From contig FLMG01004277.1 in NCBI GenBank assembly GCA_900088475.1, forward strand, positions 49,141 to 113,140: 64,000 nt of DNA, read 5' to 3'. Below are positions 1-59,573 of this stretch, piece by piece (within the stretch, counting starts at the first letter, position 1; each line of letters opens with the position of its first letter). This DNA comes from Hyphochytrium catenoides. Lineage: Eukaryota; Protista; Hyphochytriomycota. The position numbers were made by a program, and so were the translations under genes. Under the pieces are notes generated by a model. That model was not told where the DNA came from and searched no databases. It worked only from the letters and a program-made list of their open reading frames with translations.

Positions 1-475
1 GCATATTCATGTTTCTAGGGCAATCCTCTGGGGCTTTCAGCAGGCTAAAAGCGCTATTGGAGCCTTATGAGGGGCCTTCAGGTGCCGCTGTGCAAAACAC
101 ACAAAAGAGGCAAGAAAGCTGAGAAATAATTGCGTTTGGACTGCTCTGGCTGCGATAAGAATCGCCGTTTTTTGGGAGAAAAGCTCCAACTTGACAGCAG
201 GGCTCAGCTCCCTTCCTATATATGTAGGTTTGCATAGAAGTAGTCAGTGAACCTGGGGCCAACTGAAGGTATTGCTGCGCGAGAAGAGTGCTGTGCTCTC
301 TACCGAGTAGGTGCTTGTCCTTTATTGGTAAGGACGCTAAAGCTTGAGGAGACGTCCATGTGCCGATCTTGAACTCTTATCTGGGTGAGTCAGCGACGCT
401 GGACGCGGGTCTGAATTGCCATGGGGCCGCAGCACAGCTCTTGACATAATTGCAATGCGACCACTGAGAAGTAGG

Positions 476-3400
476 ATGTATGCCGCAGTCTGGCTGGCAG
501 TCCTGGGCTTGCCTTGCCTACTGCAAAGCGTATATGGCCTATGTGAGACCTGCCAGGACCCGAAGCAGTGCTGGCATGAAGCGTCCAAGAGCTGCAAACC
601 TTTTTTGACGGAGCCTGCCTGCCCTGCATCATTCCGTCCATGCAGTAAGTGTTCTCTCATCTCCACCTACTTCTTTTTGGTCAAGCTCTAACTTCATTTT
701 GACAAAGCCTGGGGTAAGAGGTGCTTCGGGAACGATGGACCTTGCATTGACCCCGGAACAGGGGTTTGCTACCCCTATCAAACTCATGCCATGTGTGGGC
801 CAAACCTCGTAGAGGGTGAGCTGCTATTTCTCTTCCTTCTTCTAATTGTATGCTCGTCACACTTAAGCGCTAGAAGTCCATGTCCCGCGGTCAACCTTAG
901 AACCTTCTCTTACTGCATATGTCAAGGACTCAGGTGTCCTTCCTATCATCCTCGGGCAGCCATTCTGTCCCCTCTTCCTGCTGCTTTCTCCTCTCGTTAC
1001 TAATCGGTCCTGTATACGTAGCGGTCTGCGAGAGCTGCACAGGTGGAACGACAGGGCGATGTCAACACCCCTTGACAAATGCGTGTCAAGACTTTTCTGA
1101 ACAAGTTTGTCCAGACAACACAGTCAGCTGTGGTAGGCCCAACTCTACTCCTTGCCCCGCCTTGTGCCCTCTACGGCTATACCTTCCTAGCGCTTACATC
1201 TTTCGCGATGTTTTAATGTCTGGGTATTTCTCTAGTTCCGACAGCGGTGGCCTGCGTTGGTGGCCATGAGAGCTGTAGGAATCCCGCAAACGTATGCCAG
1301 TTTGGCGATGGAACCTGCGTTGCAAAGTCTGGCACAAGATGCCCCGAGGGTAGTGGGATCTGCGGTATGAGCTCTATCAGTTGGGCCGTATCTTGTCTTG
1401 GATACTGAGAGAGTCGCCTTGCAGACAAGCTTTCTTATCGCTGTAATACCAAGACTTTCCAGTGTGAAATAGCGCCCAGAAGGCCATCACAGAACGAGGC
1501 ACTCTTTGGGACGTTCGCCGATTGCGAAAATAACTGCTGTATGTACTCTTCTACGTTGTCCAGGCGTGTTTGGCACTTCTCCTCTTGTTTCCTGGCTCGT
1601 TAAAAAGTGGGTTATTTGGCATTCCTATTCGCGTCAGGTTCAAGTTCTTTCTGCCCGAGCTGCCTCTTCATTTGCTCCTAGGGGATTGGCAATCTCCTAC
1701 ATCTTTGGTCTTGGATCACCTATCTTGGTCCTCGGCTGCGTTTGCCTTCGTCACTTCTACCCGTTTCTGAGGACTAAGAGGTATCGAGCACAACCGATGG
1801 TACTGACCACTCTCTAGTTTACTACCGATGCATAGGCGGTCAGTGCGTTCCAAACGGGGATATGCAAAGTCGTGACGGGCAGACTCTTTCGAATTGTAGG
1901 AAAAGCTGCGGCTGTGGACCGCGTAATTCCTGTAAAGGGAGCACCTTCGGACCCTTCCAAATCACCGCTGGAGAATTTTCTAAAGAGTGCTCGCCTGTGG
2001 AGGTTCCAGGCGTACAAATGGAGAAGTGCAATGCAGCAGACAGTAAGACTTCTTTATGCTAGACGAGGAGCATCGTTGACATGAGCAATCTAGTTGGCAC
2101 CTATCTCTTCTCGTTCTTGACCAAACGACGAAATGCCGCAGTCTAATGGCTTCTTGATAGATGTGGACGCGGTGTACAAGAGCAGGCCATTATTCCTATT
2201 GTCAGACATCCAGGGGGCCAACGACATTCGTAAGTTAAAAGTGGCAAATGCAGCAGCTTGTGTTCGGTGTCCTCTTCCTTGACAGTTCGTTCGTTGCTGA
2301 CATTCTTTGCCTTGAATTAGGATTTCGGTCTTTTGGACTTCTTCCGCCCTTTGAATCTTGACCATCCGTCCTGCCTTGCAGCCGCTTCCGGGGGGTGTCT
2401 TTTTGGTTGACATTTTGTCCTTTGCTGACAGTGTTTGCTTTAAGTTAAGATGCCTGTGATTCTGACACTTCTTCCGCCCGTTGTACCTCTACTATCCGAC
2501 CTCCCTTGCAGCCGCTTGTCGGGGATGTGGAAACGGAGGTGATTTTGGCGATACTTCCCCATGGCAGCTTTATTGTGAAAGCAGTCCCTCCTCTAACTCT
2601 TCAACCCTAACGTGCACTCGCCTGAATACTGGGGTGACGTCTCCAATCTGCCCAAGTAGCTTTCGTCTCTGCCAAGGTGAGACACATTGTAGAGAGAGCC
2701 ATAGACGGTTGCAGAAACGTATGTTAGTGAAAGCGAGACCTATCCGCCAAAACTGGACTCATTCGTGAGACATGTAGCAGACTGTAACAGATGAGGAAGC
2801 AAGACAAATCGCACTGAGCTTGGGATACCTCGTATCTCACCATTCTTGCGCCTTTTGCAGTGAATCCCAACAAATACTCCCTCCTTCCGTTCTCGGCAAA
2901 TCCTGGGGCAGTGACAGACGTTTCGTTCACTTATACCGTCGGTGACTTGACGAAGACCTATGTCGGAGGAACTTCTTGTCTATCTTTGGCCTTGCCCGAA
3001 GGCTGGTATGTCTCAGAGGCAGACCCTCTTGCATGCAAGGCGAGAAGTATAGAAGGGTCTGCACCGTCATGCGTTGTCCCTTGTCGTCTCTCTTCCCCAT
3101 CGACCATTGAGGTCAGGGTCGGAGGAGACACTTGCGTGAGGGGAGTTCCGGAGGGCGGAAGCGTCACTGTCACTATCTCAAAGCTCGGGCTTCCAAGAAC
3201 GAACACTAGTAAAGAACAGACCCTACTTAAGGTTGGCGAGTGTGGTGGAAGGAGGCTTTCATCCACACTTATAAGCTTCTGGGATGGCCCTGATGTACGG
3301 AGGTATGCCCATCTTCCCCTCTACTCCCAACCCGACACTTCCTGCGATCTCCGGTCATTCATGATGTCTCTTGAGATAATGGTGTGATTATGTGCCTACC

Positions 3401-6400
3401 ATCTTGGATGGTTTGGCATCAAGTCCTAACTCACTCCTTATGTCTCATATCAACCCTAGACGACTGGCAGACGGTCCTGGCGTGTTGTCCTACCTACAAG
3501 TCCCATCGTTGAAGGCTCCCGGGTCAATTTCGGGAGGCGTCGCACTAGAGAAACCTTTAGAAAGGATTTCTGGTGAAATGTACATCAATGTATTTCTGGC
3601 TTCATCAGTTCCAGCCGGAACCTTCTTCTGTGTGGACTTCTGTGTGGACGAAACTTGTAGGAGGGAGCTTCTGACAGGTCAGTACTGAGCTCAAAGGAAC
3701 GCTATTTAGAACGATGAAAGAAGATAATTGGGACGTTGCTTGGAGGAGGTGATGATACCGCCGTGACTAGTGGATACAAATGTGAACATGTTTACAGGGA
3801 TCGATGTAGTAGCGGCATATTGTCTTGCTTTTGCTTCCGACGTGAGCACTGCGCTACGTAGCTGTTCTGAGGCGTATACTTCTAACCAATGCCGCGTTAA
3901 AACTTGTAGACCAACTCGCTTTCTCTTGGCGAAAGTCCAGTGAAACAAAGGGGTATGTGTCTGTTAGAGGGCAGACAACACCGAGCCTCCAGGCACCTAC
4001 TGCGCGGCCTAATGAAACTTTTGGGTGCTGGACCGTTCCGGTTAATATTCCGGCCGCTCCATTTTCTATGGTGACGTTTACGCTCACTAATGTGACCAAC
4101 CCGAAGAGCTTAGGGCAGGATCCTCTCCGCACGAGTATCTTGAGGTCTATAGCCTTCAGTATACAGGGCAACTCAATGGCGGTATGCATCTGCGTAGTCA
4201 CAGTCTTTCTCTTTGCGTCGCTCTTTTTCTTCGTCTATACAGCCTTTGTAATCAACACTGATAATATTTCTTATTGCAGCTGGAAGGTGCTTATCTGGCC
4301 GGGCCAGCTTTCCTGACGGTGCAGCCTATCTTTGCTGCAGGACCGAATACCGACAATGTTTATAACGTTGTATCGGTTATCCTTTACTGCCTAGCACTCG
4401 CCCTATGTATATTCATCGCAAGGGTCAATGGTATGTCTCGTCTTGGAACCTCCTTCTGTCGGACCTTTTCGCCAGTACTTTTCCCATTGTAAAAGTACTT
4501 TTTTGGCCTTTGAGGTGTGTGTATAGAGAGTTCTTTCAAATGTTAACCCTGGGCTTCGTTCACAGGCATATCATTCTCAACGAAGACGCTATGGACCGAT
4601 CTGACATCCACATGCGTACTTATCCACTTTTGCATCCTGGTATGATGAACCCTGAATGGAATAACAGCAGACACGCGTGTACATTGTCTCTCGCCTTCTC
4701 TGACTTCTCGCCCCCTCTAATTTCTCGCCCTGCTTCCATGAGGAGATGGAGCCCTACAGCGGTTCTCTACTCTTTCTGTGTTTCACATTTTTTTGAAGCC
4801 GTGGTTTTCTATGCTAAGAGGAGTGTGTCCGGATGGCTCTCATTCTTGGTTGTCTTGTCCTCCATTGGGCTCCTTTCAGGTGGCGAACAACGCTACCTGG
4901 ATCCAGGTAGCTGGGTCGTACTACTATTACCTACAGGTTTTGGACTACTGCATCCAGTGGACTATGCTACTCTCAGTCTGCTACCATTGGGCTAGCATTC
5001 TTACCCTTAGGCTGAGAAAAGTACCCACTCCTGTCCAGGTAACAATGGTTGTTCTCTTGCTTCTTGACTAGCTTAGGGATTCGAGGCTATCAAATCCCCG
5101 TCCTTCTATTTTTCTGGCGCTTGAAGGCTGACTCATCATCTTAGGCGGCAATCTTTGTGGTGCTCAACCTTGCTTTTTATGGCATTGCTATCTGGGCATT
5201 AGTCTCGACAAAGAACATTATCAACTGCGTGTACAATGAAGCCAAGCCTCTGTACTCCGATCTTCAGCCATCTTATTGGAGAGATCTGTCTAATAGCTTG
5301 GTAAGTAATTTGCTAAGCCTTTATGCCTTCTCTAGACCATAATAGGTGCCGACCTGGCGAACCCTTGCATTAGTGACATTTGATTTTACCTGGTCTAGTT
5401 ACGTGCTTAGCTTGCACTTATGAGATCACACAGGGTTGATAAGACGGTCGAGTCTTCAATCCTGTCATCCACAGCGTCGACGGTGCTGACTCTTTCTTTT
5501 CTCAGTCCTGTCAGCAATATCAGTCAAAAGGAAACTTCGCTCTGTACTACCATTTTAGCCTAACAGTGATCTTTGCGGTGAATACGCTAATCCTGAGCGC
5601 TTTGGGCATAATGGTGATGCTAAGGGGAAGAAGACTCTTGAAAAAGGTATGGACTCCAGAGACTAGGGAGTACACTGAGTTTATTGGGAGTCTGACGGTG
5701 CTGCTTGTTCAACGTCTTCGTCCTACAGGATCGTCAAAAGGAAGGAATGAACACAAATGAGAGGAAGCACGACGTTATCAAACAAGCCATTACTCGCTGG
5801 GTTCTTGTTATCTTCGTTGTTACCTCTATTTACCTCGTCTCTTGGGTGCTGGACATCTATAACTTTGCAAAAAATAACAACGCCTTGATGGAGTACACAG
5901 TATGGTATGTCTTCGTCATCTGGCTGCCAAACGTGATACCGGCATGTGCTTTCGTGTTCCTCCAGGTAAGCGGCTCCATATACTCCCATGTACCTCCTCG
6001 GTCTCACCGTCCAGGTTCCTCCCTATTACGGTATGACCTCACCCTGCCGCCAATCTAATGTATTTACCTCTTCTCCATAGTCGGACAGCGGTGTACGCGA
6101 CCTCTCGCAGCCCATAAAACGGCCGGAGCGTTACTCAGTACCTCAGAATGGCAACCCTTACCTATCGGACGACATGGACTTGGATAAGGAGACACTGACC
6201 GATCTAGCCAGTGGCAATGATGCGAGCAGCAGGAGTATCAAGGCGCAGACTTCTTTCAAGTCGGGCAATTCCGGTAATACATTTTCATAATCATACCTTG
6301 CCCAGTCATTCGTATAGTAATGACTAACCTTACGTGCCAGAGATACTATCTGTTCTCCAGATGCACATTACTATATCAGCTAGCATCTCTCTCTTTCTCG

Positions 6401-9400
6401 CCATGTTCATCGAGCCCGGCGTGGCGAGGGTTTCTGATTCTGTTATTTAGCTGTAGGGCTGTTCTTGTCCGTAAACGCCCTTCACTTATCTTTTCACTAA
6501 CATGCACCTCTATGTCGTAGTACTAAGCCTGGCAGTGCATCTGCGAATGTGCCCAAAGAAAGAGATGCTGACGCCTGGAGCGAAGTATAGGATCACTGCT
6601 TACGCGACTGACGTTTCTGCAATGACGGTAAGACCATGCGGGGTGAGATGTGACGGAAATGGGAAAGCCGACTGTGGAGCAAGAGGAAAAGGTTTCTTTG
6701 GAAGAACTATGAAGTTCGGGAAAGAAAGTCGAGTGTGTTGTTTCTTACTGCATTGGGTCACATCGTGTGTGTTCACTGCCGTACAGATGAACGCGGCCCC
6801 TGTAGGAAACCCTCTAGAAGGGCTTCTGAGCCGCCAGGACAAGGATAAAGGGGGGCTGACCCGTTCTTGGCATAAGATCTCGTCCACAGAAGCCTCGTAT
6901 GCCACACCTGTTGATTTTTCTGACTCTTCCCAGCATACTGAAGTGGCTGATGAGGTAAAAAGCCAAATTGAGCCCTTCTGTCTAGAGCACATCGTCATCC
7001 TTTCCTAACATCTGGATATATTTGCTCTTAAACTCATGGATATGCCCTGCTCTCTCATGGATGCGCTTTCGCCACCCAGACGGAGATTTCTTTCATTGTC
7101 ACACTTAGAATCCCAACCAGCATCCGCAACCCCGAGCAGAGCATCCGCTTTGTTGTCTATGAGGTAGGAAAAAATTGACCCTGGTGCCTAGCGTTTGCTG
7201 CTCTTAGCGGTTTGCAAAGTTTCGATAAAATGCATTCCTTAGGACTTTTCTTCACTGTGCCTTTGACAGGAATGCCTAGAGGCTCAGCTTAATGAAAAAT
7301 CCTTTTCAACCTCGTCGTCCCGTTCCACGTTGGTGCGAGAGGGACCCAGCAGGAGATCCATCACGGACCGTCCTTCTCTGTCTATTACCAGGCCTAGAAG
7401 CTCTTCAGCACCCTCTACCTCGGAGCTCTACGGCGGCACGAAAAAATGCCTGTTTGAGTTTCAAGCCACCTGCAAAGAGCTGCTAGATGGCATTGACTTT
7501 TCTGGTACCTGCCAGTCAATATTTCCTATCTTGCCTTATCCACCTCTTTTGAGTACAGGGCTCCATCTGAATGGTACATGTTATGTCTCGCTGTTTATCT
7601 TACTTGTTTTTTCCTGCCAGGCTCTCTGCAGCTCGTAAATATCTCTAACCGCAAAGAGACGTCTGTCCGCTCTACATGGACTCAGTATATGAGTGGCAGA
7701 GGACTCCTTTTTCAGAGAGCGCCTTCTCTCAGCTCAGCGGAGTTGACTCTATCTCTTGTTCACTCAGAGGACCCTGACATAGGAGGTACGTATCCAAGAG
7801 AAAGAATCGCTTTCCTAGGCTGGCTGCTTTTAGGGTGGTGGCTCAAAATATCCTTCATCAGCCTGCTACCTGTCATATCGGCCCCAGCCTTTCCATTCGC
7901 AACGCTTATCTTTCGCTGACTTTTGCCTCTGTTGCCATATTTAGTTGACAAGCAGGAGCCGACGATAGTCAGAAGCTTTGTCCTACCTTCTCATTCCCCT
8001 GCGCCAGAGGTGATAGAAATGTTCGAGACCTCCCTTTATACCAATGAAGTGCCCAGACAAATGATTGTTCTCCTAATGAAAAAGAGAGGCGAAGCTGTGG
8101 AAAGGTTCGCAATGCTCTTGTGCCTCTAACCTCTATATCTCCTTCAATTTGGCCACAAGGCATAAGGATCATTGTTAGCTCGCCAGCAGGCTAATCTATA
8201 TACTCCGTTCCTGCTTGATGGGTCCGCTGTCCCGACTTTCGAGCTCGATAGTTTCACGTCTCTCACTCTTTGTGACTGTGGATGGCCGTAGCCGATAACC
8301 CTTTTCGCAATAGTTTGTTGATGATAAGAAGCTAACTGCTTTACATAGTGCGGCAAGAGATTTGAAGCTCTTTTATGAAACTGAGTCCACAGCAGAAGGA
8401 GAGGGAGCAGGTCGCTCTTCAGACTCATTCAAGGTCTCAAGGAGAGTTAGTCAGCCGTTGATCACTCGGGAGTGGCTGGAACAGGTATGTACCGCTAAAC
8501 GAATGATGACATAGGAATGAGGAATTACACGTGACACTTATGCGGAGATAGAGAAACCACCAGACGCCTAGTCTGATAGTTCAACGAGAGGTGTTGATTC
8601 TGGGATTAAAAACAAGTAGTAGACACACGCTGACATGTACACTTTAGCGTGTGAACCGCCGCCGCGAGTACCTGGCTTCTCTCAAGGAGAGCATGAAGGC
8701 TTGTTCAGAAAGAGAACGATTGGGGCGTTTGCTTAAACCTCTACAGGACAGGAAGGTGCCAGAGCTACGGTTTATCCCTACAAATTTACACGTCCATGTA
8801 AGCATCTCTGGTGGATCTCTACTATCTTGTCATATTCCTAACAACAGATCGTCCGTGAATGCTTTATCCTTCGTGTTCCTCTCTGCAGCGCCTTCTAGTA
8901 CACCGAAAAGGTGCTGCCGTTGCTGCTCCTTTGGCTCTACGAACTCTCTTAGAGCCCCACCAGCGTGCTATTTATGACTACGGGACCATTACAGTTGGGG
9001 CTTTTGCCGCTGCCTCGATGAAGTTTAAGAAAGGAGGTAATTTTTATGCCTTACTACTTCTTATTAGGTTGGAGCTGACGTGTCTCCTGACAGGAGTACT
9101 ATCATACCGAGATCGCATTAGGCGCTTGCGGCAGAAGATGGTGAGAAGAGAATCCGTCACAGAGAGAACAACCGAGGGAAGGGCTTCTGATATACGCGCA
9201 TCTCTTCTCGGCGACAATTCTGAGGTTTGTGACACAGCTTTTTATTACGCGCAGAAGTCACTATAGCTGGCGTTTGGCTTGAGATTTCTGCGAAACTCTC
9301 CTTCCTTCTGATTGTGAGTTTTTTCCCCCTAATTACCGGCATCTAACAATCTTACCGTTACCTAGTCAAGGTCGTCAACTGTGGAACGGAAAGTCTGGAC

Positions 9401-11177
9401 AGACGACGCGATGCGGATGGATGACTTAGAATGGGATATGGCGGTAGGTTTGCTGTTCCGTTTTCCTCTAAAACCTATCAGAGCGGCTCGGTTAATACTG
9501 TCTGCACCTATTTCTCTTCATCACTTCTAGTGGCTCTCTATGTAACTCTTCCTTTCCCTGCTTCTTTCCAAGGAAACTTCCCGTGTCCGGTGTAGCTTGC
9601 CTACATTGATTCATTCTGATGCCTGACCTTTTCAATCTCGACAGTGCCGATTGGATGTTTGCTTAACCCAGGCGATGACGGCCTTGGTAACGGCATTTAC
9701 TCACAGCATCCGGGTGGCCTTGACCAGTACCGATATCAATAAGGGGAAACAGTACCTTGAGATCATCATGAAGCTAGGATATCTGTTTCAGGTGCCTCTG
9801 TGCCCAGACGTGTACCGCCGCTCACTTTGTCATGGGTGATAGCTTTCTCTAGTTGGTCCTGTAATGTGGATGATGCGCATAGAGCAACCGATCCCTTGTA
9901 ACGTCTTGCCGTCTCGCCACTTTTCCGATTTTTCCTCTTTTGCTTGCTACTAGTAGATGTCGGCCTTAAAGTCTATCCATCTTGCGCCAACTTAGTAACC
10001 ACCCCTTTCTGCTTTATTCTAGGTCGAATCACTACTTTCCACGGATGGCAAGGAGCTTGGCATGCTGCAGGACGTCGCTGCTGCCGTTGCGAAACTACAG
10101 AGCGTAAAGTTCATGTTAGAGGACATCGGAGACATTGTTCCAAGAGACAGGAGAGGTCCAGGGGTCGTTGGAGTGAGCCTGCAGCCAGGGAATGACGACA
10201 GGGAGGATTCGTACCTAGTAAGAGTGCAGATAAGGTGCCACTCAGATGCTCTGCCGGAAGACTTGAGGTGAGAAGAAGCGTCATTAGCTGGTCATCCTAA
10301 GTCCCCCCTGCTCTTGGCAGCACTCGCCTCTGCCGAATCTTGCTTCAAGAGTCCTTCCTTCTCTGGCCTGAACGCAAGACAATTGACTCGCCCTTCTTTC
10401 TTCTCATCCGCTGGATTGTAGGAATGGTCGTTTGGTTTCAGTCGTCGCTCTGCTGTTCACACAGAACCTCTATCCAAAGCCCAATCCCGTCAAATCTTCA
10501 GCTCCAACTAAAAGGACACGCCTGGAGGAGCTCATCAACGTGAACAACGCAAATGTGTTGGCAGAGTACTGTTCAGGGTATCAGAAGATACTTCCGACGG
10601 CTGCCTCTCTTTTACCTAGAGTGCAGAGATTGAAGGCTGCCATTGACGAGGCTGCCGCTGTGGCAGATGCGCAAGTGCCTGTTCTACCACTTGCCGCTGA
10701 TATCTGTCGAGAGATGAACGCCGGCAGGGTAACGATGTGCAAATCTGCAAAGGACAAAACGTACTTGAGTAGTACATTTGAAGAAGTAAGCCTTTTGCTG
10801 TCTTTCCTTCTGCTTCGTCCACTAGTTCTTCATCACTTAGTTTATCAAGACTTGTCCGCCTACCTGTTGGAATCAAATCCTGATTTATTTTACATATGGT
10901 GTTTGCTATGGGCTACGGAAGTAACGCTGTTGCCATGTCTCGCTTATTCTTATGATAGGCACGGATTCTTCGGGAACACCACAGCTTGGAGGAGAAAGAC
11001 TTTGCTAATGTCCTGTTGGTGTTACGGTATCATGGCGTCTGTCTTCAGCAGCTGGTACGCCAGTCGGGCCGTACTCCTATCACGTTTATGGAGAACGAGG
11101 ACGATGCCCCTCGGTGGCCATCATTTGACGAAGCAGAGGATGGCAAGCGAGCCCTGGGGCCTTATGAATATCTATGA
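476..11177 (+). CDS. Multi-exon receptor-enzyme fusion: signal peptide, 5 Cys-rich modules, beta-rich ectodomain, 7TM (GPCR-like) domain, C2-like region, inositol polyphosphate 4-phosphatase (INPP4)-like domain; probable pseudophosphatase
   Basis: ATG 476 gives the signal peptide MYAAVWLAVLGLPCLLQSVYG (an in-frame ATG at 455 is an alternative). Cys-rich exons run to 2676 and beta-rich exons lie at 2861-4190. Seven hydrophobic helices are encoded at ~4360-5965 (VVSVILYCLALALCIFIA; LTSTCVLIHFCILVA; VLDYCIQWTMLLSVCYHWASIL; AAIFVVLNLAFYGIAIWALV; LTVIFAVNTLILSALGIMVML; WVLVIFVVTSIYLVSWVL; VWYVFVIWLPNVIPACAFVFLQ). INPP4 motifs follow in the expected order: FIPTNLHVH, TITVGAFAA..KFKKGG, DVCLTQAMTALVTAF, GYLFQ/VESLLSTDGKELGMLQD, RVTMCKSAKDKT. 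Stop TGA at 11175-11177. A few junctions (e.g. ~3680-3950) were not resolved. Confidence 0.8.
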
Positions 11178-11425: not shown

Positions 11426-14400
11426 TTACATCTTGGCCTTACAGCTGCTGCAATACCAGTCATCTTCAGGGACTTTTTTCAAACCCACACAGTTCTAGAG
11501 TGGGACCGGCAAAAATAGAGAGAGGAAACCCAGAGCAGTGAAGAGGCAAACGTTAGAAGGGATGTAGCTCCGCGACAAGAGAGTAGACGACTACGCAGTC
11601 AAGCAGAAGATGTAGAGGCTGATTGACTATCTAGTCGATGGTGGCCAAGGAAGGGAGTAAGACCATGCTATACGGAGAACGGAACGATAGAAGCTTAGAG
11701 TAGCATTAGGTGCCATATAACGTGAAGAGAGCGCCAACAAAAGCTGGAGAGAGTTCTCTTTCGTACCAAATGGAAGACGCGGTCGCAGCCTTTGCTACCA
11801 TCCTCAGAGCCACAAATGACATGCGAATCCAATCGAAGCTTCCCTTTCTTGCAGGCGCCACATGTCTGGGACTCACATTCCGTGCAGAACCATTCCGCTT
11901 GCGGCGTTTTCTAGCATAAATTTGGAGCAACTGTGAGCTAGACGCCGCAAAACATGCAAGCAAAACGGTAGATAGCGTTCCACCAGACACCCAGATGGGC
12001 TGAGTTCTAATAGACAGTATGTCCTTGGAAGGACACATCCGCGAAAGGCAGAGGATGAAGCCGTGACCATCCGAAACATTTACCTTGAGTCCAAGGCACT
12101 GCAAATGGAACGAATGCGGACAGCCATCACAGCAGAGAAGCTTGCCCTCCTTCTTGCATATGAAACACTCTGTATCCCAGCCATCCGGGGACTCTTCCGC
12201 TTTCTCCTCCTCCTTCTTCTTTGATTTGTCCTTCTTCCCCGACGAGGAGTCCTTTCGGGGATTTGGGGGAGGAGTCTTTGTTGTGACTGAGCCACGAGAA
12301 GATCTTCGTCCTCCTTCTGTGTCTCTAGGCTGCTTGCCCTTGCAGCTTGGGCAGAAGGTCTTCCCCCGAGGAGTCCGAGTAAGACCCACGCAGGCGAGAT
12401 GAAAGACCTTTGTGCACCCATCGCTGAACATTTTTCACGGTACCCACGGCAGAGCGGAGTCAGTGCACTTTCGACAACAAGGACCATGAGGGGCACTCAT
12501 GAGACTGCGTAAGTCCGAAGAGGTGGCAAGAGAAAAGTAGGTGACGTCACAGATGAAGGCTCAGGCCGACCAAGGAGATTGCCAGGGGTAGGGGAGCTGA
12601 ATCTACTTTAGAGGCCAGAACTAGTGTGCGAAATCATACCAGCATATGAGGTCACCGCCTTCTTTGCAGACGCAGCAGTTCTCTTCCCAGGTGTCTTCAT
12701 CTTCTCCGGACTCTTCATCCTGTACTACTTCTTCTTCCTCCTCTTCCTCTTCTATAACCAACTCCTTTGCCTTCGCCTTCGCAGACCTAGAGGGACGTTC
12801 TGGAGCTAGCCAAACAGATAGTTGATAAGTGGTTGGCCAAGAAATAAAATATAACATGATCCACAATCACAGAAGTACATAAGGCTAGGGGACAGGCGAT
12901 TCTCGCTGATGCGACTGTCCCGCTTAGCTACTTACTTTTTTCCTGAACTGCAGGAGGAGAGCTATGTTTGTCCATTGCCAGCACTAGGCGAAGTAATGTG
13001 CGGGCGGCACTTCCGATGGCGGCAAGGGTCATTGCCTCTTTTACGGACTAGTGGGCGGTGGGGTTAGACGAAGGATGTAGGTTCAATAGAATGTGCGGCC
13101 ACGAGATAGATGAAAAGAGTAGTAGAGATCTCACTGACTGCGACATCGCGTCACCACTCGCCTAGGTCCCAAGTCTTACATTAATCCAAAGATTGCGCTT
13201 GCTCTTTGTGGTCCAGATGGATATGGGTTGGAGGTTTTCGTCCTCATCGTCTTCCTCTTCTTCTTCTTCCTCTTCATCTTCGTCAGTCTTCCCTTCTCCT
13301 CTGTTCCCTTCTTTCTTCACCGAGTTGGTCACCTGCCGTCGCGAAGATGTAAATGAACTTGTGTGAGAAAGATGGACTCTTGAGGACTAATCACCTCCGC
13401 CTTCCTACCTTATCGTCGCTTTTTTCCGAGCCCTGCGGGCTCTCATCAGACGACTCCCCTTGGCCTGGATGAAAGGCTCCAGTAATGGCAGCCTCGATGT
13501 CTAGTAAGACCTGCCTTAGGTGCTCCTCATTCCCATCGCTCGAAAGGAGAGCCAACTGTGAAGACACAAATACGGCCAAAGTCAGGGAAGTCAGTTCCGC
13601 TTTACTTCATAGTCCTTTATAAAAACAAGGGTATGAAAGCCACTTGGCAACGTATTTTAACAGAGCCATCAGACACAAAGGAAAGTCTCATTCTTTCGAA
13701 GCAGCCTCCCGCTCTGCCATGGCGATGAGGAGTAGTACTTTCTACGCACCGCTGTGGCCCGACGAGGATGATCTTTATAATCACTGCCATACTTGGTCAT
13801 AATGTTAAGGACATCGCCCTCTGTCTTCTCTAGCGCCGCCTTCACCTCCTTCACATCAAACTCAATCTTCGTGTCGCGCTTGACGACTCGACCTTTGAAC
13901 TTGTTTGTGTATGATAGAAAAGTGTCCTATAACACGATTAAATTTTCAGAGGAAAACTAGGCGCTCGTGTAAAGGTAAGAAAAGCAAAAGGGAAAGCTCA
14001 CCGGATCTGTAGAGTCAACATGAGGAGACAGAATTAGCTGATCATCCTCCGGTTTTGACTGCGCTTCGTTCACTTCCGTCTTCTGTCTTTTGGGCATCTA
14101 GTATGCCCAAGGTAGGGATTCATCTCAGACAGAGTTGATGTTTCGATATTGTATCCTTTTACCTTTTGCAAGTTTGGCAGGGTATCTTCCAAAGCTCTCT
14201 TTAGATGGCGCTCCCGTATTCCCCTCTCGTCTAAAGCACGAATAAGCTCTTCTACGTCCTCCTAGAGCATACGACATCAGTCAGAGTCCGCCGAGAAAGC
14301 AAGGAGTCATTTTGTTATAGGCCCCTCAACTTCGATCAGAGATACATCCCATGCTGTACTTCTCTTCTCCATGCCTGTCACTCCTTACTTTATGGCAGAA

Positions 14401-22119: not shown

Positions 22120-22550
22120 GAAGAGAGAAATGGAAAGGGAAGAGGAAGCCAAGTGCCGAGGAAAGAAGAGGTTTCTGATGCGGGGGCAGCGTTTATGGAT
22201 CACTTTGTTCGGCTGCGCTGCCACACTCTACAAGACGCTTTCCCCTTAGGTGAGATCCCTTCGAGCAATCAATCTAGTTAGATAAAACACTGTATTTGGG
22301 GGTGTCTCCCTCAAGTAGGTGTTTGGGGGGTGGCTTCTTGTAACGCCGAAACGACATATGGAGATGCTCGTCGTTAGATTCCTCTGCTCTCTCTCTCTCC
22401 CTACTGTTTGTCACTGCTCTATCATGCCCACTTCTGTCTCTCTCTCTCTCTCNNNNNNNNNNNNNNNNNNNNNNNNNNNNNNNNNNNNNNNNNNNNNNNN
22501 NNNNCTCTCTCACTCTCTCTCTCTCTTCTGCTTCCTGTCTCCCTCTCTCC
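21920..22550. repeat. (GA)n then (CT)n microsatellite tracts in the divergent intergenic region between ARL6IP4 and the IP3R, including an assembly gap (N 22453-22504)
   Basis: Directly visible: GA-rich 21920-22140 and CT-rich 22380-22550 flanking the N run. Confidence 0.9.
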
Positions 22551-54043: not shown

Positions 54044-54120
54044 GCTCTCTCTCTCTCTCTCTCTCTCTCTNNNNNNNNNNNNNNNNNNNNNNCTCTCTCT
54101 CTCTCTTCTCTCTCTCTCCT
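54044..54120. repeat. (CT)n microsatellite spanning an assembly gap (N 54071-54092)
   Basis: Directly visible. Confidence 0.9.
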
Positions 54121-58709: not shown

Positions 58710-59573
58710 ATGGCCGACGAAGAGGTAGATTTCCAACGTGTAGTTGAGGAGCGCGACGTGGAGATTGGAGGACTCAAAGAAGCAGACTCTTCCAGCGGAA
58801 AGAAGCATGGCCTCGTATTTGGTTATCGGTTGACGGAAAAGCTAAACGGGGACTTTTACAGAGCTGTGGCTGGCGAGTTCTTCGGGACCCTGATGTTCTT
58901 GTGGTATACCATTACGGCAGTGGTCTTCTTCAGAGTGCCCACGTTTGATGTGGAGTCCTTGCCAGCAAATTCGAACCCTTCCTTCTCGGAGGGAGACTCT
59001 GCCACCCAACTTATGATCGCCTTCTCCTTTGGTATTTCTATTGCAGTGCTCGTCTACTGGTTCGCTGGCGTCTCTGGTGGACATATCAACCCTGCCGTAT
59101 CTCTTGGACTCTTTATCTGCAAGAGAGTTTCATTTCTTCGTGCGGCAGCCTACACTGCCGCCCAAATGGTTGGTGCTATCGTCGGTACTGCAATCGCTAA
59201 AGGCGTAAACCCCAGCCTCTTTGATGCTGCCAATGGAGGGGCCAACGTAGTATCTCCTATCCTGACTGATGGGGAGGCGTTTCTCGGTGAGCTCATGGGC
59301 ACTGCAGGCCTTGTTTTTACGGTCTGCATGGCTTGCGACAAGCGAAGTGCCGGCAATTTCGTTTCAGCATTAACCATTGGTTTATCAGTCTTCATTGCCC
59401 ACATCGCTCTCATCCCTATCACTGGCACCTCTGTCAACCCTGCTAGGTCTTTCGGACCAGCAGTAGTTGCTGATGCCTGGGAAGACCAGTGGATCTTCTG
59501 GATTGCCCCTTACACTGGTGCTATTGTTGCTGCCCTTGTCTATCAACTCCTTTTCCGGTCTAAGGACGATTAG
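58710..59573 (+). CDS. Aquaporin (MIP family), PIP/AQP1-like, intronless
   Basis: FYRAVAGEFFGTLMF, SGGHINPAVS, GTSVNPARSFGPAV and WEDQWIFWIAP; two NPA boxes and six TM helices; ar/R filter read as F-H-T-R. Confidence 0.96.
   Translation: MADEEVDFQRVVEERDVEIGGLKEADSSSGKKHGLVFGYRLTEKLNGDFYRAVAGEFFGTLMFLWYTITAVVFFRVPTFDVESLPANSNPSFSEGDSATQLMIAFSFGISIAVLVYWFAGVSGGHINPAVSLGLFICKRVSFLRAAAYTAAQMVGAIVGTAIAKGVNPSLFDAANGGANVVSPILTDGEAFLGELMGTAGLVFTVCMACDKRSAGNFVSALTIGLSVFIAHIALIPITGTSVNPARSFGPAVVADAWEDQWIFWIAPYTGAIVAALVYQLLFRSKDD

What the first reader, a model, noticed from the sequence alone, without database searches (positions are those of the whole stretch)
476..11177. One-polypeptide receptor: modular ectodomain + 7TM + C2-like region + INPP4 inositol-phosphatase domain
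Seen: exons on the + strand lead from a signal peptide through Cys-rich and beta-rich extracellular regions and seven TM helices into a cytosolic INPP4-like domain, with no second start or intergenic gap evident. Known: 7TM-INPP 'GPCR-bigram' fusions occur in oomycetes. Inference: the added ectodomain of several hundred residues, reminiscent of adhesion receptors, makes this an architecture I do not recognise as described. It could couple a surface ligand directly to phosphoinositide signalling without a G protein.
Basis: partly seen in the sequence, partly recalled or inferred. Interest (0 to 1): 0.85.

Follow-up and report, generated by a model that had tools for sequence, protein, structure and literature searches.

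The report
Receptor fused to degenerate INPP4 phosphatase
This is very probably one 32-exon gene for a surface receptor (large outside part, seven membrane helices) joined to an INPP4-type lipid phosphatase, a design already catalogued but never tested in water moulds as "GPCR-INPP", outside part included; this copy is unusual only in four extra cysteine-rich modules and a damaged-looking active site.

Summary
A continuous + strand reading frame can be built from ATG 455 to TGA 11177: 32 exons, all GT-AG, 1872 aa. It encodes a signal peptide, about 670 aa of ectodomain, seven TM helices, a weakly C2-like region and an INPP4-like domain. No transcript data could be obtained.

A profile of the nearest relatives hits the window 16 times in strict order from the first TM helix to the C-terminus. 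One intron-less relative encodes ectodomain, 7TM and INPP4 in a single ORF.

The claim of a new architecture does not hold. The nearest relatives (about 31-33% identity) are the oomycete "inositol-3,4-bisphosphate 4-phosphatases", which are the published GPCR-INPPs. By hydropathy they have about 280-570 residues ahead of the helices, and many begin with a signal-peptide-like stretch. A confident AlphaFold model of one such ectodomain is tandem Ig-like beta-sandwiches; no GAIN/GPS domain was detected, so the family does not test as an adhesion GPCR.

Two things are particular to this copy. It has four N-terminal 6-Cys modules with no counterpart in the 141 relatives retrieved. Its catalytic domain is degenerate: CKSAKDKT instead of the CKSAKDRT found in all 90 homologues compared, the GINE motif is lost, and 14 of 39 near-invariant positions differ.

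The scan already reported two intact GPCR-INPP genes elsewhere in this genome.

The parts
455..11177 (+). Whole gene: curated 32-exon GT-AG model, 5619 nt CDS, 1872 aa. Exons: 455-644, 708-815, 1022-1132, 1245-1364, 1425-1538, 1818-2042, 2512-2676, 2861-3302, 3460-3677, 3862-4181, 4280-4430, 4566-4639, 4880-5038, 5145-5300, 5506-5646, 5729-5965, 6081-6273, 6521-6642, 6787-6954, 7080-7163, 7270-7504, 7621-7785, 7945-8096, 8314-8484, 8648-8797, 8889-9036, 9094-9140, 9366-9443, 9645-9791, 10023-10267, 10422-10785, 10959-11177
   Evidence: Junction enumeration; assembly with no internal stop; family HMM hits colinear along the window
455..538 (+). Signal peptide, aa 1-28
   Evidence: Sequence and hydropathy; in-frame stop upstream at 386-388
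539..1364 (+). Four tandem 6-Cys modules of about 36 aa, one per exon (E1-E4), with phase-1 introns. They are lineage-specific: no counterpart in the 141 relatives retrieved
   Evidence: Cys spacing 2/5-7/7/7-8/6 and no phmmer hit; no Pfam family
1425..2042 (+). Two Y-x-C...C...C-x3-C modules (E5, E6), resembling the N-terminal module of oomycete GPCR-INPPs
   Evidence: HMM hit E 0.065; hhalign E 0.011. Marginal
2512..2676 (+). CxxC-containing module (E7). It contains no Met, so it cannot be a first exon
2861..4181 (+). Beta-rich ectodomain region (E8-E10, aa 345-671). Its size and motif order match the tandem Ig-like domains of the relatives
   Evidence: Only motif-level or marginal sequence similarity. 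Alignments to relatives start at aa 612-642, but most of their score comes from the 7TM
4355..5965 (+). Seven TM helices (aa 697-977; exons E11-E16)
   Evidence: Hydropathy; phmmer and blastp to relatives; the 7TM of a relative models as a GPCR fold
6521..7163 (+). Weakly C2-like region (aa 1042-1166)
   Evidence: hhalign to the C2 region of soluble INPP4-like proteins, E 0.0025, probability 12%; no Pfam hit
7785..11090 (+). INPP4-homologous region: helical linker plus phosphatase domain (aa 1300-1844)
10738..10761 (+). P-loop CKSAKDKT. The Lys codon AAA at 10756-10758 replaces the invariant Arg
   Evidence: DNA read directly; all 90 homologues aligned carry the Arg, and the long homologues listed with the motif read CKSAKDRT
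10465..10476 (+). NLYP in place of the near-invariant GINE motif after LFTQ
   Evidence: P-Rex2, which carries a related IP4P domain, also lacks the motif

Best explanation
This is one intron-rich gene encoding a divergent member of the stramenopile GPCR-INPP class. The protein has an N-out, C-in topology. The outside part is a signal peptide followed by about 670 aa of ectodomain: four lineage-specific 6-Cys modules, two Y-x-C 4-Cys modules, a CxxC module, and about 330 aa of beta-rich sequence. The beta-rich part is inferred to be Ig-like by analogy with a modelled relative. A GPCR-fold 7TM bundle follows. The cytosolic part is a full INPP4-like unit: a weakly C2-like region, a helical linker and a CX5R-type phosphatase domain. 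Proposed mechanism (inferred, not shown): a ligand or surface contact at the ectodomain changes the 7TM conformation, and this acts on the tethered INPP4 module at the inner membrane leaflet. In this copy the P-loop Arg is Lys, GINE is lost, and 14 of 39 near-invariant catalytic-domain positions differ. The module is therefore more likely to bind or sense PI(3,4)P2, or to act as a scaffold (as the INPP4-like IP4P domain of P-Rex is thought to), than to turn substrate over efficiently. It may work alongside the intact paralogues that other agents noted in this genome. Shown: gene continuity by frame and homology, family membership, and the sequence degeneracy. Inferred: the splicing, the fold of this copy's ectodomain, all coupling steps, and loss of activity.
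For: A complete in-frame 32-exon GT-AG model runs from 455 to 11177. Sixteen colinear family-HMM hits lie between 4346 and 11075, E down to 3e-19. phmmer of the model against relatives gives E 5e-133 (P0038) and about 1e-100 to 1e-113 for oomycete proteins, covering both the 7TM and INPP4 parts, at 31-33% identity. P0038 is encoded as one uninterrupted 4167-nt ORF holding ectodomain, 7TM and INPP4. E5, E7, E8 and the TM1 exon carry no usable ATG, so each must be spliced to upstream exons. The relatives are the published GPCR-INPPs. Models of relatives: ectodomain pLDDT 87, matching tandem Ig-like adhesin and pilin domains at E 1e-8; 7TM pLDDT 81, with the listed PDB matches all GPCRs at TM-score about 0.55. 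Degeneracy. The INPP4-domain profile matches the P-Rex1/2 IP4P domain at E 2e-47.
Against: No transcript evidence exists: no RNA run was listed. The bulk of the ectodomain is not significantly similar to that of the relatives (HMM scores are within the shuffle range; segment E-values 0.02-3), so its Ig-like fold is only inferred. No model of this copy itself was made. Arg to Lys is a single-base difference (AAA versus AGA) and could be a sequencing error. Lys can retain residual activity in some CX5R enzymes (general knowledge, not tested here). No member of this class has been characterised biochemically.
Confidence: 0.8

Rival explanations
1. Two genes. A secreted Cys-rich protein of about 295 aa (455 to the stop at 2060-2062) is followed by a separate GPCR-INPP that starts at ATG 2248 (MQQLVFGVLFLD...) and is spliced to the exon at 2512.
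For: The E6 reading frame reaches a stop at 2060 if the donor at 2042 is not used. ATG 2248 opens a short hydrophobic peptide that can join E7 in phase 1. The E1-E4 modules have no counterpart in any relative. There are no transcript data.
Against: The donor at 2284 is poor (gttcgt, score 6.2), whereas the 2042 donor is strong (gtaaga, score 10.0) and already in phase with the same acceptor. A 12-aa leader is short for a signal peptide. The relatives place the Y-x-C module, which here lies in E5/E6 upstream of 2248, directly before the C-x-x-C motif. The unbroken run of phase-1 module exons E1-E7 is what one modular gene would look like.
Confidence: 0.12
2. The phosphatase is catalytically competent, giving an ordinary ligand-gated lipid 4-phosphatase. 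The Lys is either tolerated or a base-calling error.
For: The catalytic Cys and the rest of the P-loop (CKSAKD) are intact. The difference is one base. The whole 5.6-kb CDS is intact.
Against: The Arg is invariant in all 90 homologues aligned. The change is not isolated: 13 further near-invariant positions differ, including GINE, more than in any other homologue in the set. P-Rex2's IP4P domain, reported as non-catalytic (my knowledge), has also lost GINE.
Confidence: 0.3
3. A decaying pseudogene copy of a GPCR-INPP paralogue.
For: The catalytic motifs are degenerate. Other agents noted intact paralogues in the same genome (not tested by me).
Against: There are no frameshifts or internal stops across 32 exons and 1872 codons. 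All 31 introns keep GT-AG. The signal peptide, the 50 ectodomain Cys, the TM helices and most INPP4 core motifs are preserved.
Confidence: 0.06

Closest known systems
Oomycete GPCR-INPPs (van den Hoogen et al. 2018, PMC5784254), e.g. P. infestans PITG_12266/D0NJF9 and PITG_02728/D0MX26; database relatives P0118 (P. infestans, 1855 aa), P0002 (Pythium oligandrum, 1521 aa), P0036 (Aphanomyces astaci)
   Same: The order of parts is the same: signal-peptide-like start, ectodomain, 7TM, post-TM7 region, INPP4 domain. Homology over the 7TM and INPP4 parts is significant (E about 1e-100, 31-33% identity). The Y-x-C module and the motifs just before TM1 appear in the same positions.
   Different: This gene has 31 introns, whereas the one relative whose locus was inspected (P0038) is a single ORF. 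It carries four extra N-terminal 6-Cys modules. Its ectodomain is about 670 aa against 280-570. Most of the ectodomain is not alignable. The P-loop is CX5K and the GINE motif is lost.
Animal INPP4A/INPP4B (soluble PI(3,4)P2 4-phosphatases)
   Same: The phosphatase domain is homologous and has a CKSAKD P-loop core. A C2-type region lies upstream (weak evidence).
   Different: The animal enzymes have no signal peptide, ectodomain or 7TM. Here the P-loop Arg is Lys.
IP4P domain of P-Rex1/P-Rex2 (PDB 6PCV, 8TUA, 7SYF, 9ZQ7)
   Same: These are the only solved structures that the INPP4-domain profile matches (E 2e-47 to 6e-39). The P-Rex2 domain likewise lacks the GINE motif. It is a precedent for an INPP4-like domain used as a regulatory scaffold; its lack of activity and its G-beta-gamma binding are from my knowledge, not tested here.
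   Different: P-Rex keeps CX5R but has a different P-loop sequence. It is a cytosolic Rac-GEF, not a membrane receptor.
Adhesion GPCRs
   Same: A large modular ectodomain sits ahead of a GPCR-fold 7TM. ADGRF1 appears among the fold matches of the relatives' 7TM.
   Different: No GAIN/GPS domain was detected by Pfam, among the listed fold matches, or by the Cys/HL-T motif before TM1. The 7TM cannot be assigned to any GPCR class.
GPCR-PIPKs (Dictyostelium RpkA, Phytophthora GK proteins)
   Same: They follow the same design logic: a 7TM fused to a phosphoinositide-metabolising enzyme.
   Different: The fused enzyme is a kinase, not a phosphatase. No homology to them was tested here.

Membership tests
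GPCR-INPP (stramenopile GPCR-bigram class) | N-terminal 7TM domain with the C-terminus in the cytosol | tested here: met
   Seven hydrophobic helices at aa 697-977, positive-inside loop charges, and alignment to the 7TM of relatives. The 7TM of a relative models as a GPCR fold.
GPCR-INPP (stramenopile GPCR-bigram class) | INPP (INPP4-type) domain C-terminal on the same polypeptide | tested here: met
   There is an in-frame exon chain and colinear HMM hits. A relative encodes both parts in one ORF. No transcript evidence.
GPCR-INPP (stramenopile GPCR-bigram class) | Sequence homology to the published P. infestans GPCR-INPPs | tested here: met
   E about 1e-100 to Phytophthora proteins named inositol-3,4-bisphosphate 4-phosphatase. 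Table S3 lists such proteins as GPCR-INPP.
INPP4 phosphatases (active enzymes) | CX5R P-loop (CKSAKDR) | tested here: not met
   The window reads CKSAKDKT, with AAA at 10756-10758. The Arg is invariant in 90 homologues.
INPP4 phosphatases (active enzymes) | Homologous phosphatase-domain core | tested here: met
   One exon alone finds 65 INPP4-type proteins. The domain profile hits P-Rex IP4P at E 2e-47. However, 14 of 39 near-invariant positions differ.
INPP4 phosphatases (active enzymes) | C2 domain N-terminal to the catalytic part | tested here: inconclusive
   hhalign E 0.0025, probability 12%, onto the Pfam-C2 stretch of P0039. No Pfam C2 hit in this gene or in the relatives.
INPP4 phosphatases (active enzymes) | PI(3,4)P2 4-phosphatase activity | not testable with these tools
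   This needs a biochemical assay.
Adhesion GPCRs | GAIN domain with a GPS cleavage motif directly before TM1 | tested here: not met
   No Pfam GPS or GAIN hit in the window exons or the relatives. There is no Cys pair or HL-T/S motif in the 60 aa before TM1. The ectodomain model of a relative matches Ig-like sandwiches.
Class C (family 3) GPCRs | 7tm_3 transmembrane domain with Venus-flytrap and Cys-rich domain | tested here: not met
   No Pfam 7tm_3 or ANF_receptor hit. Only a UniRef name on one orthologue (P0095) cites a family-3 profile. mGlu ranks 41st among the fold hits.

The most novel reading that the evidence does not exclude
This copy is a receptor-pseudophosphatase. An ectodomain-gated 7TM receptor carries a tethered INPP4 module that has lost catalysis (CX5K, GINE lost). 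The module would act as a PI(3,4)P2 sensor or as a docking scaffold, in the way the IP4P domain of P-Rex is thought to, and might regulate the intact GPCR-INPP paralogues of the same genome. The lineage-specific array of four 6-Cys modules would give it a different ligand. A second point: the tandem Ig-like, adhesin-like ectodomain of the whole GPCR-INPP class is not described in the papers read here.
Probability: 0.4. Interest if true: 0.55.

Novelty: new member of a known kind. Interest (0 to 1): 0.33.

Why it matters
GPCR-INPPs are catalogued but untested receptors that could link an outside signal directly to phosphoinositide turnover. This gene adds an intron-rich member whose nearest retrieved relatives are oomycete proteins at only about 31-33% identity. 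The published 'bare 7TM plus enzyme' picture of the class leaves out an ectodomain that models as Ig-like in one relative. The gene also gives a natural contrast to the two intact paralogues that other agents reported in the same genome: a copy with a degenerate active site, useful for asking whether catalysis or lipid binding is the output. It is not a new kind of system.

Tried and rejected
- **RNA evidence:** The look-up of sequencing runs listed no run.
- **Pfam:** nothing reached a family's curated threshold, on window exons or on full-length relatives.
- **PDB by sequence:** the catalytic exon alone gave nothing, and the 7TM profile gave nothing.
- **Ab initio exon-chain DP:** with codon usage trained on about 1170 codons it over-split (54 exons) or under-split (12-22 exons) depending on the intron penalty. 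I dropped it in favour of homology-guided manual curation.
- **Ectodomain homology:** two HMMs of relatives' ectodomains scored the window's ectodomain within the range of shuffled controls. hhalign gave only E 0.011 for the Y-x-C module, and E 2.8e-5 for a stretch that includes TM1. Segment-wise phmmer gave E 0.02-3. Homology of the bulk ectodomain is therefore not shown.
- **ESM Atlas on two ectodomain exons:** only unnamed clusters, with low recognition values.
- **Readings rejected:** adhesion-GPCR and class-C GPCR (see the membership tests), and pseudogene (the ORF is intact).
- **Not done:** a fold prediction of the window's own ectodomain (both prediction jobs went to relatives with usable alignments), identification of the organism, and any comparison with the two paralogues in other windows, whose sequences I could not reach.
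Full report
**Observation.** The region is eukaryotic, about 49% G+C, and coding sequence is broken into many short + strand reading-frame pieces. I enumerated every GT/AG pair that keeps frame between neighbouring pieces. I chose among them using splice consensus and alignment to relatives. The result is a 32-exon model from ATG 455 to TGA 11177: 5619 nt of CDS, 1872 aa, no internal stop, all 31 introns GT-AG and 57-469 nt long.

The N-terminus (MRPLRSRMYAAVWLAVLGLPCLLQSVYG) is a canonical signal peptide, with an in-frame stop upstream at 386-388. Exons E1-E7 all have phase-1 boundaries and each carries a Cys-rich module. E8-E10 (2861-4181) are beta-rich. Seven hydrophobic helices lie at aa 697-977 (window 4355-5965). 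The basic loops (RLRK, RGRRLLKK) fall on the side predicted to be cytosolic, and an N-A-T sequon falls in the first outside loop. The C-terminal 570 aa are INPP4-like. No RNA-seq run was listed, so splicing is inferred.

Three places in the model are unresolved:
- the E2 start (708 or 762);
- a possible cassette exon at 2161/2206-2229;
- the E23/E24 join.

**One gene or several.** An exhaustive search with the catalytic exon returned 65 INPP4-type proteins. Many of the long ones also carry several hydrophobic helices upstream of the INPP4 motif. An HMM built from 15 of these hits the window's + strand pieces 16 times in strict order. The hits run from the first TM helix (4346) to the C-terminus (11075), with E down to 3e-19. 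Two further marginal hits fall on the Y-x-C modules at 1418-1576 and 1814-1921.

phmmer of my model against the retrieved proteins gives E 5e-133 for P0038 and 1e-100 to 1e-113 for oomycete proteins. Each match has separate aligned blocks over the 7TM and over INPP4, at 31-33% identity. P0038 is encoded on its contig as a single uninterrupted 4167-nt ORF. In that relative the fusion is therefore a single reading frame and does not depend on a gene model.

Upstream, E5, E7, E8 and the TM1 exon have no ATG that could start translation, so each must be spliced to something 5' of it. The only credible way to split the gene is to end it at the stop at 2060 and restart at ATG 2248. That needs a poor donor (gttcgt), while a strong in-phase donor (gtaaga at 2042) is available. 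I put the two-gene reading at about 12%.

**What the relatives are.** Cluster look-ups name the relatives as 'inositol-3,4-bisphosphate 4-phosphatase' of Albugo, Pythium, Phytophthora, Plasmopara, Peronospora, Aphanomyces, Thraustotheca and others. Table S3 of van den Hoogen et al. (PMC5784254) lists P. infestans proteins with that product name, such as PITG_12266 (1541 aa), under GPCR-INPP. The main text says GPCR-INPPs were found in oomycetes and Nannochloropsis only. The window's gene is therefore a divergent member of a published class.

Other agents in this scan concluded that the genome is an oomycete-related stramenopile. They have already reported two intact GPCR-INPP genes on other pieces of it. 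I did not test either claim.

**The ectodomain is not an addition.** By hydropathy, the 7TM-bearing relatives have about 280-570 residues ahead of TM1, and many start with a signal-peptide-like hydrophobic stretch. The PITG_12266 sequence in Table S3 begins MPPGAFARLAGLLLALAGLKTANAAFPESFAYKCESNKC..., which is a signal-peptide-like start followed by the Y-x-C module.

An AlphaFold model of the Pythium oligandrum ectodomain, made with a 19-sequence alignment, is confident (pLDDT 87, pTM 0.80) and mostly beta. Its best PDB matches are tandem Ig-like domains of bacterial adhesins and pilins and integrin alpha legs, with E down to 1e-8. The papers I read do not discuss this ectodomain.

For the window's own ectodomain, homology to these relatives is not statistically established:
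- Profile scores lie within the range of shuffled controls.
- Segment searches give E 0.02-3.
- Only the Y-x-C module (hhalign E 0.011) and a stretch that runs into TM1 (E 2.8e-5) stand out. Pairwise alignments begin at aa 612-642, but most of their score comes from the 7TM.

Motif order and domain lengths do run in parallel: the Y-x-C module, then C-x-x-C, then 'L-x-L-x-x-P-x-x-W', then '...T-N-V-x-N-P...', then TM1. I therefore regard it as a fast-evolved version of the same ectodomain, but this is inference.

What is particular to this copy is the block of four 6-Cys modules at aa 29-176. No relative matches them, and neither does any Pfam family.

**The 7TM.** Neither Pfam nor a PDB sequence search recognises the 7TM. 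A model of the P. infestans 7TM (pLDDT 81, pTM 0.83) has only GPCRs among its 50 listed PDB fold matches: beta-adrenergic receptors, PTH1R, ADGRF1 and mGlu, at TM-score about 0.5-0.56 and E about 3e-3. This gives a GPCR fold with no assignable class. No GAIN/GPS domain was detected, so adhesion-GPCR membership fails, and class C membership is also unsupported.

**The cytosolic part.** The stretch after TM7 aligns weakly to the C2 region of soluble INPP4-like proteins (hhalign E 0.0025, probability 12%), and Pfam gives nothing. 'C2-like' therefore remains a lead. A profile of the catalytic region matches the IP4P domain of P-Rex2 and P-Rex1 in the PDB at E 2e-47 and 6e-39.

The window's P-loop reads CKSAKDKT, with AAA at 10756-10758. 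All 90 homologues aligned have Arg at that position. Among the 39 positions that are at least 95% conserved in those homologues, the window differs at 14, more than any other sequence in the set. These include G-I-N of the LFTQGINE motif, a Lys, a Met and an Arg after the P-loop. In the P-Rex2 alignment the same GINE motif is replaced.

That P-Rex IP4P lacks phosphatase activity and binds G-beta-gamma is my own knowledge, not something tested here. Together with the sequence changes, it favours an impaired or non-catalytic module, at about 55-60%. A one-base sequencing error cannot be excluded for the Lys alone.

**Mechanism.** Shown here: the topology-compatible arrangement, class membership and the catalytic-site degeneracy. 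Inferred: a ligand or contact at the Cys-rich and Ig-like ectodomain acts through the 7TM on the tethered INPP4 unit at the inner leaflet. In this copy the output is more likely lipid binding or scaffolding than hydrolysis. Whether G proteins take part is unknown for the whole class.

**Verdict.** It is a new member of a known, functionally untested kind, with two copy-specific features worth noting: the extra 6-Cys array and the degenerate active site. Interest is modest.

Noticed in passing
window 645-707, 1365-1424, 9037-9093: Mini-introns of 57-63 nt sit beside ordinary 100-470-nt introns. The 57-nt one is needed to restore the conserved KGG(I/V)LS motif, so very short introns appear to be real in this genome.
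   Followed up: partly
window 2161-2229 (or 2206-2229): A possible phase-1/phase-1 cassette exon lies inside the 469-nt intron between E6 and E7. It has a strong gtaagt donor at 2230 and usable acceptors. It is not in my model.
   Followed up: partly
window 11706-12870, - strand: The next gene lies tail-to-tail about 530 nt downstream. Its ORFs carry PHD-finger-like C4HC3 patterns (e.g. [24 protein letters not shown]) and acidic or Lys-rich tracts.
   Followed up: no
window 58710-59573, + strand: A single-exon 287-aa ORF has two NPA motifs (HINPAVS, SVNPARS), so it looks like an aquaporin/MIP channel.
   Followed up: no
P0066 versus P0001 (Albugo candida): Two annotations of the same Albugo GPCR-INPP differ by 526 N-terminal residues (1843 versus 1317 aa). 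One of the gene models is probably merged or truncated.
   Followed up: no
P0052 (Cantina marsupialis), P0140/P0096 (MMETSP1103, labelled 'Paraph...', probably Paraphysomonas), P0058, P0029 (EukProt): INPP4 proteins with N-terminal TM helices also occur in non-oomycete stramenopile transcriptomes. The class may therefore be wider than the 'oomycetes plus Nannochloropsis' stated in 2018.
   Followed up: partly
model m4e8024c0f0f6 (P0002:1-382): The ectodomain of an oomycete GPCR-INPP models confidently as tandem Ig-like sandwiches resembling bacterial adhesins and pilins. I found no mention of this in the papers read.
   Followed up: partly
window 22453-22504 and 54071-54092: Two runs of N (assembly gaps) lie outside the gene studied.
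   Followed up: no
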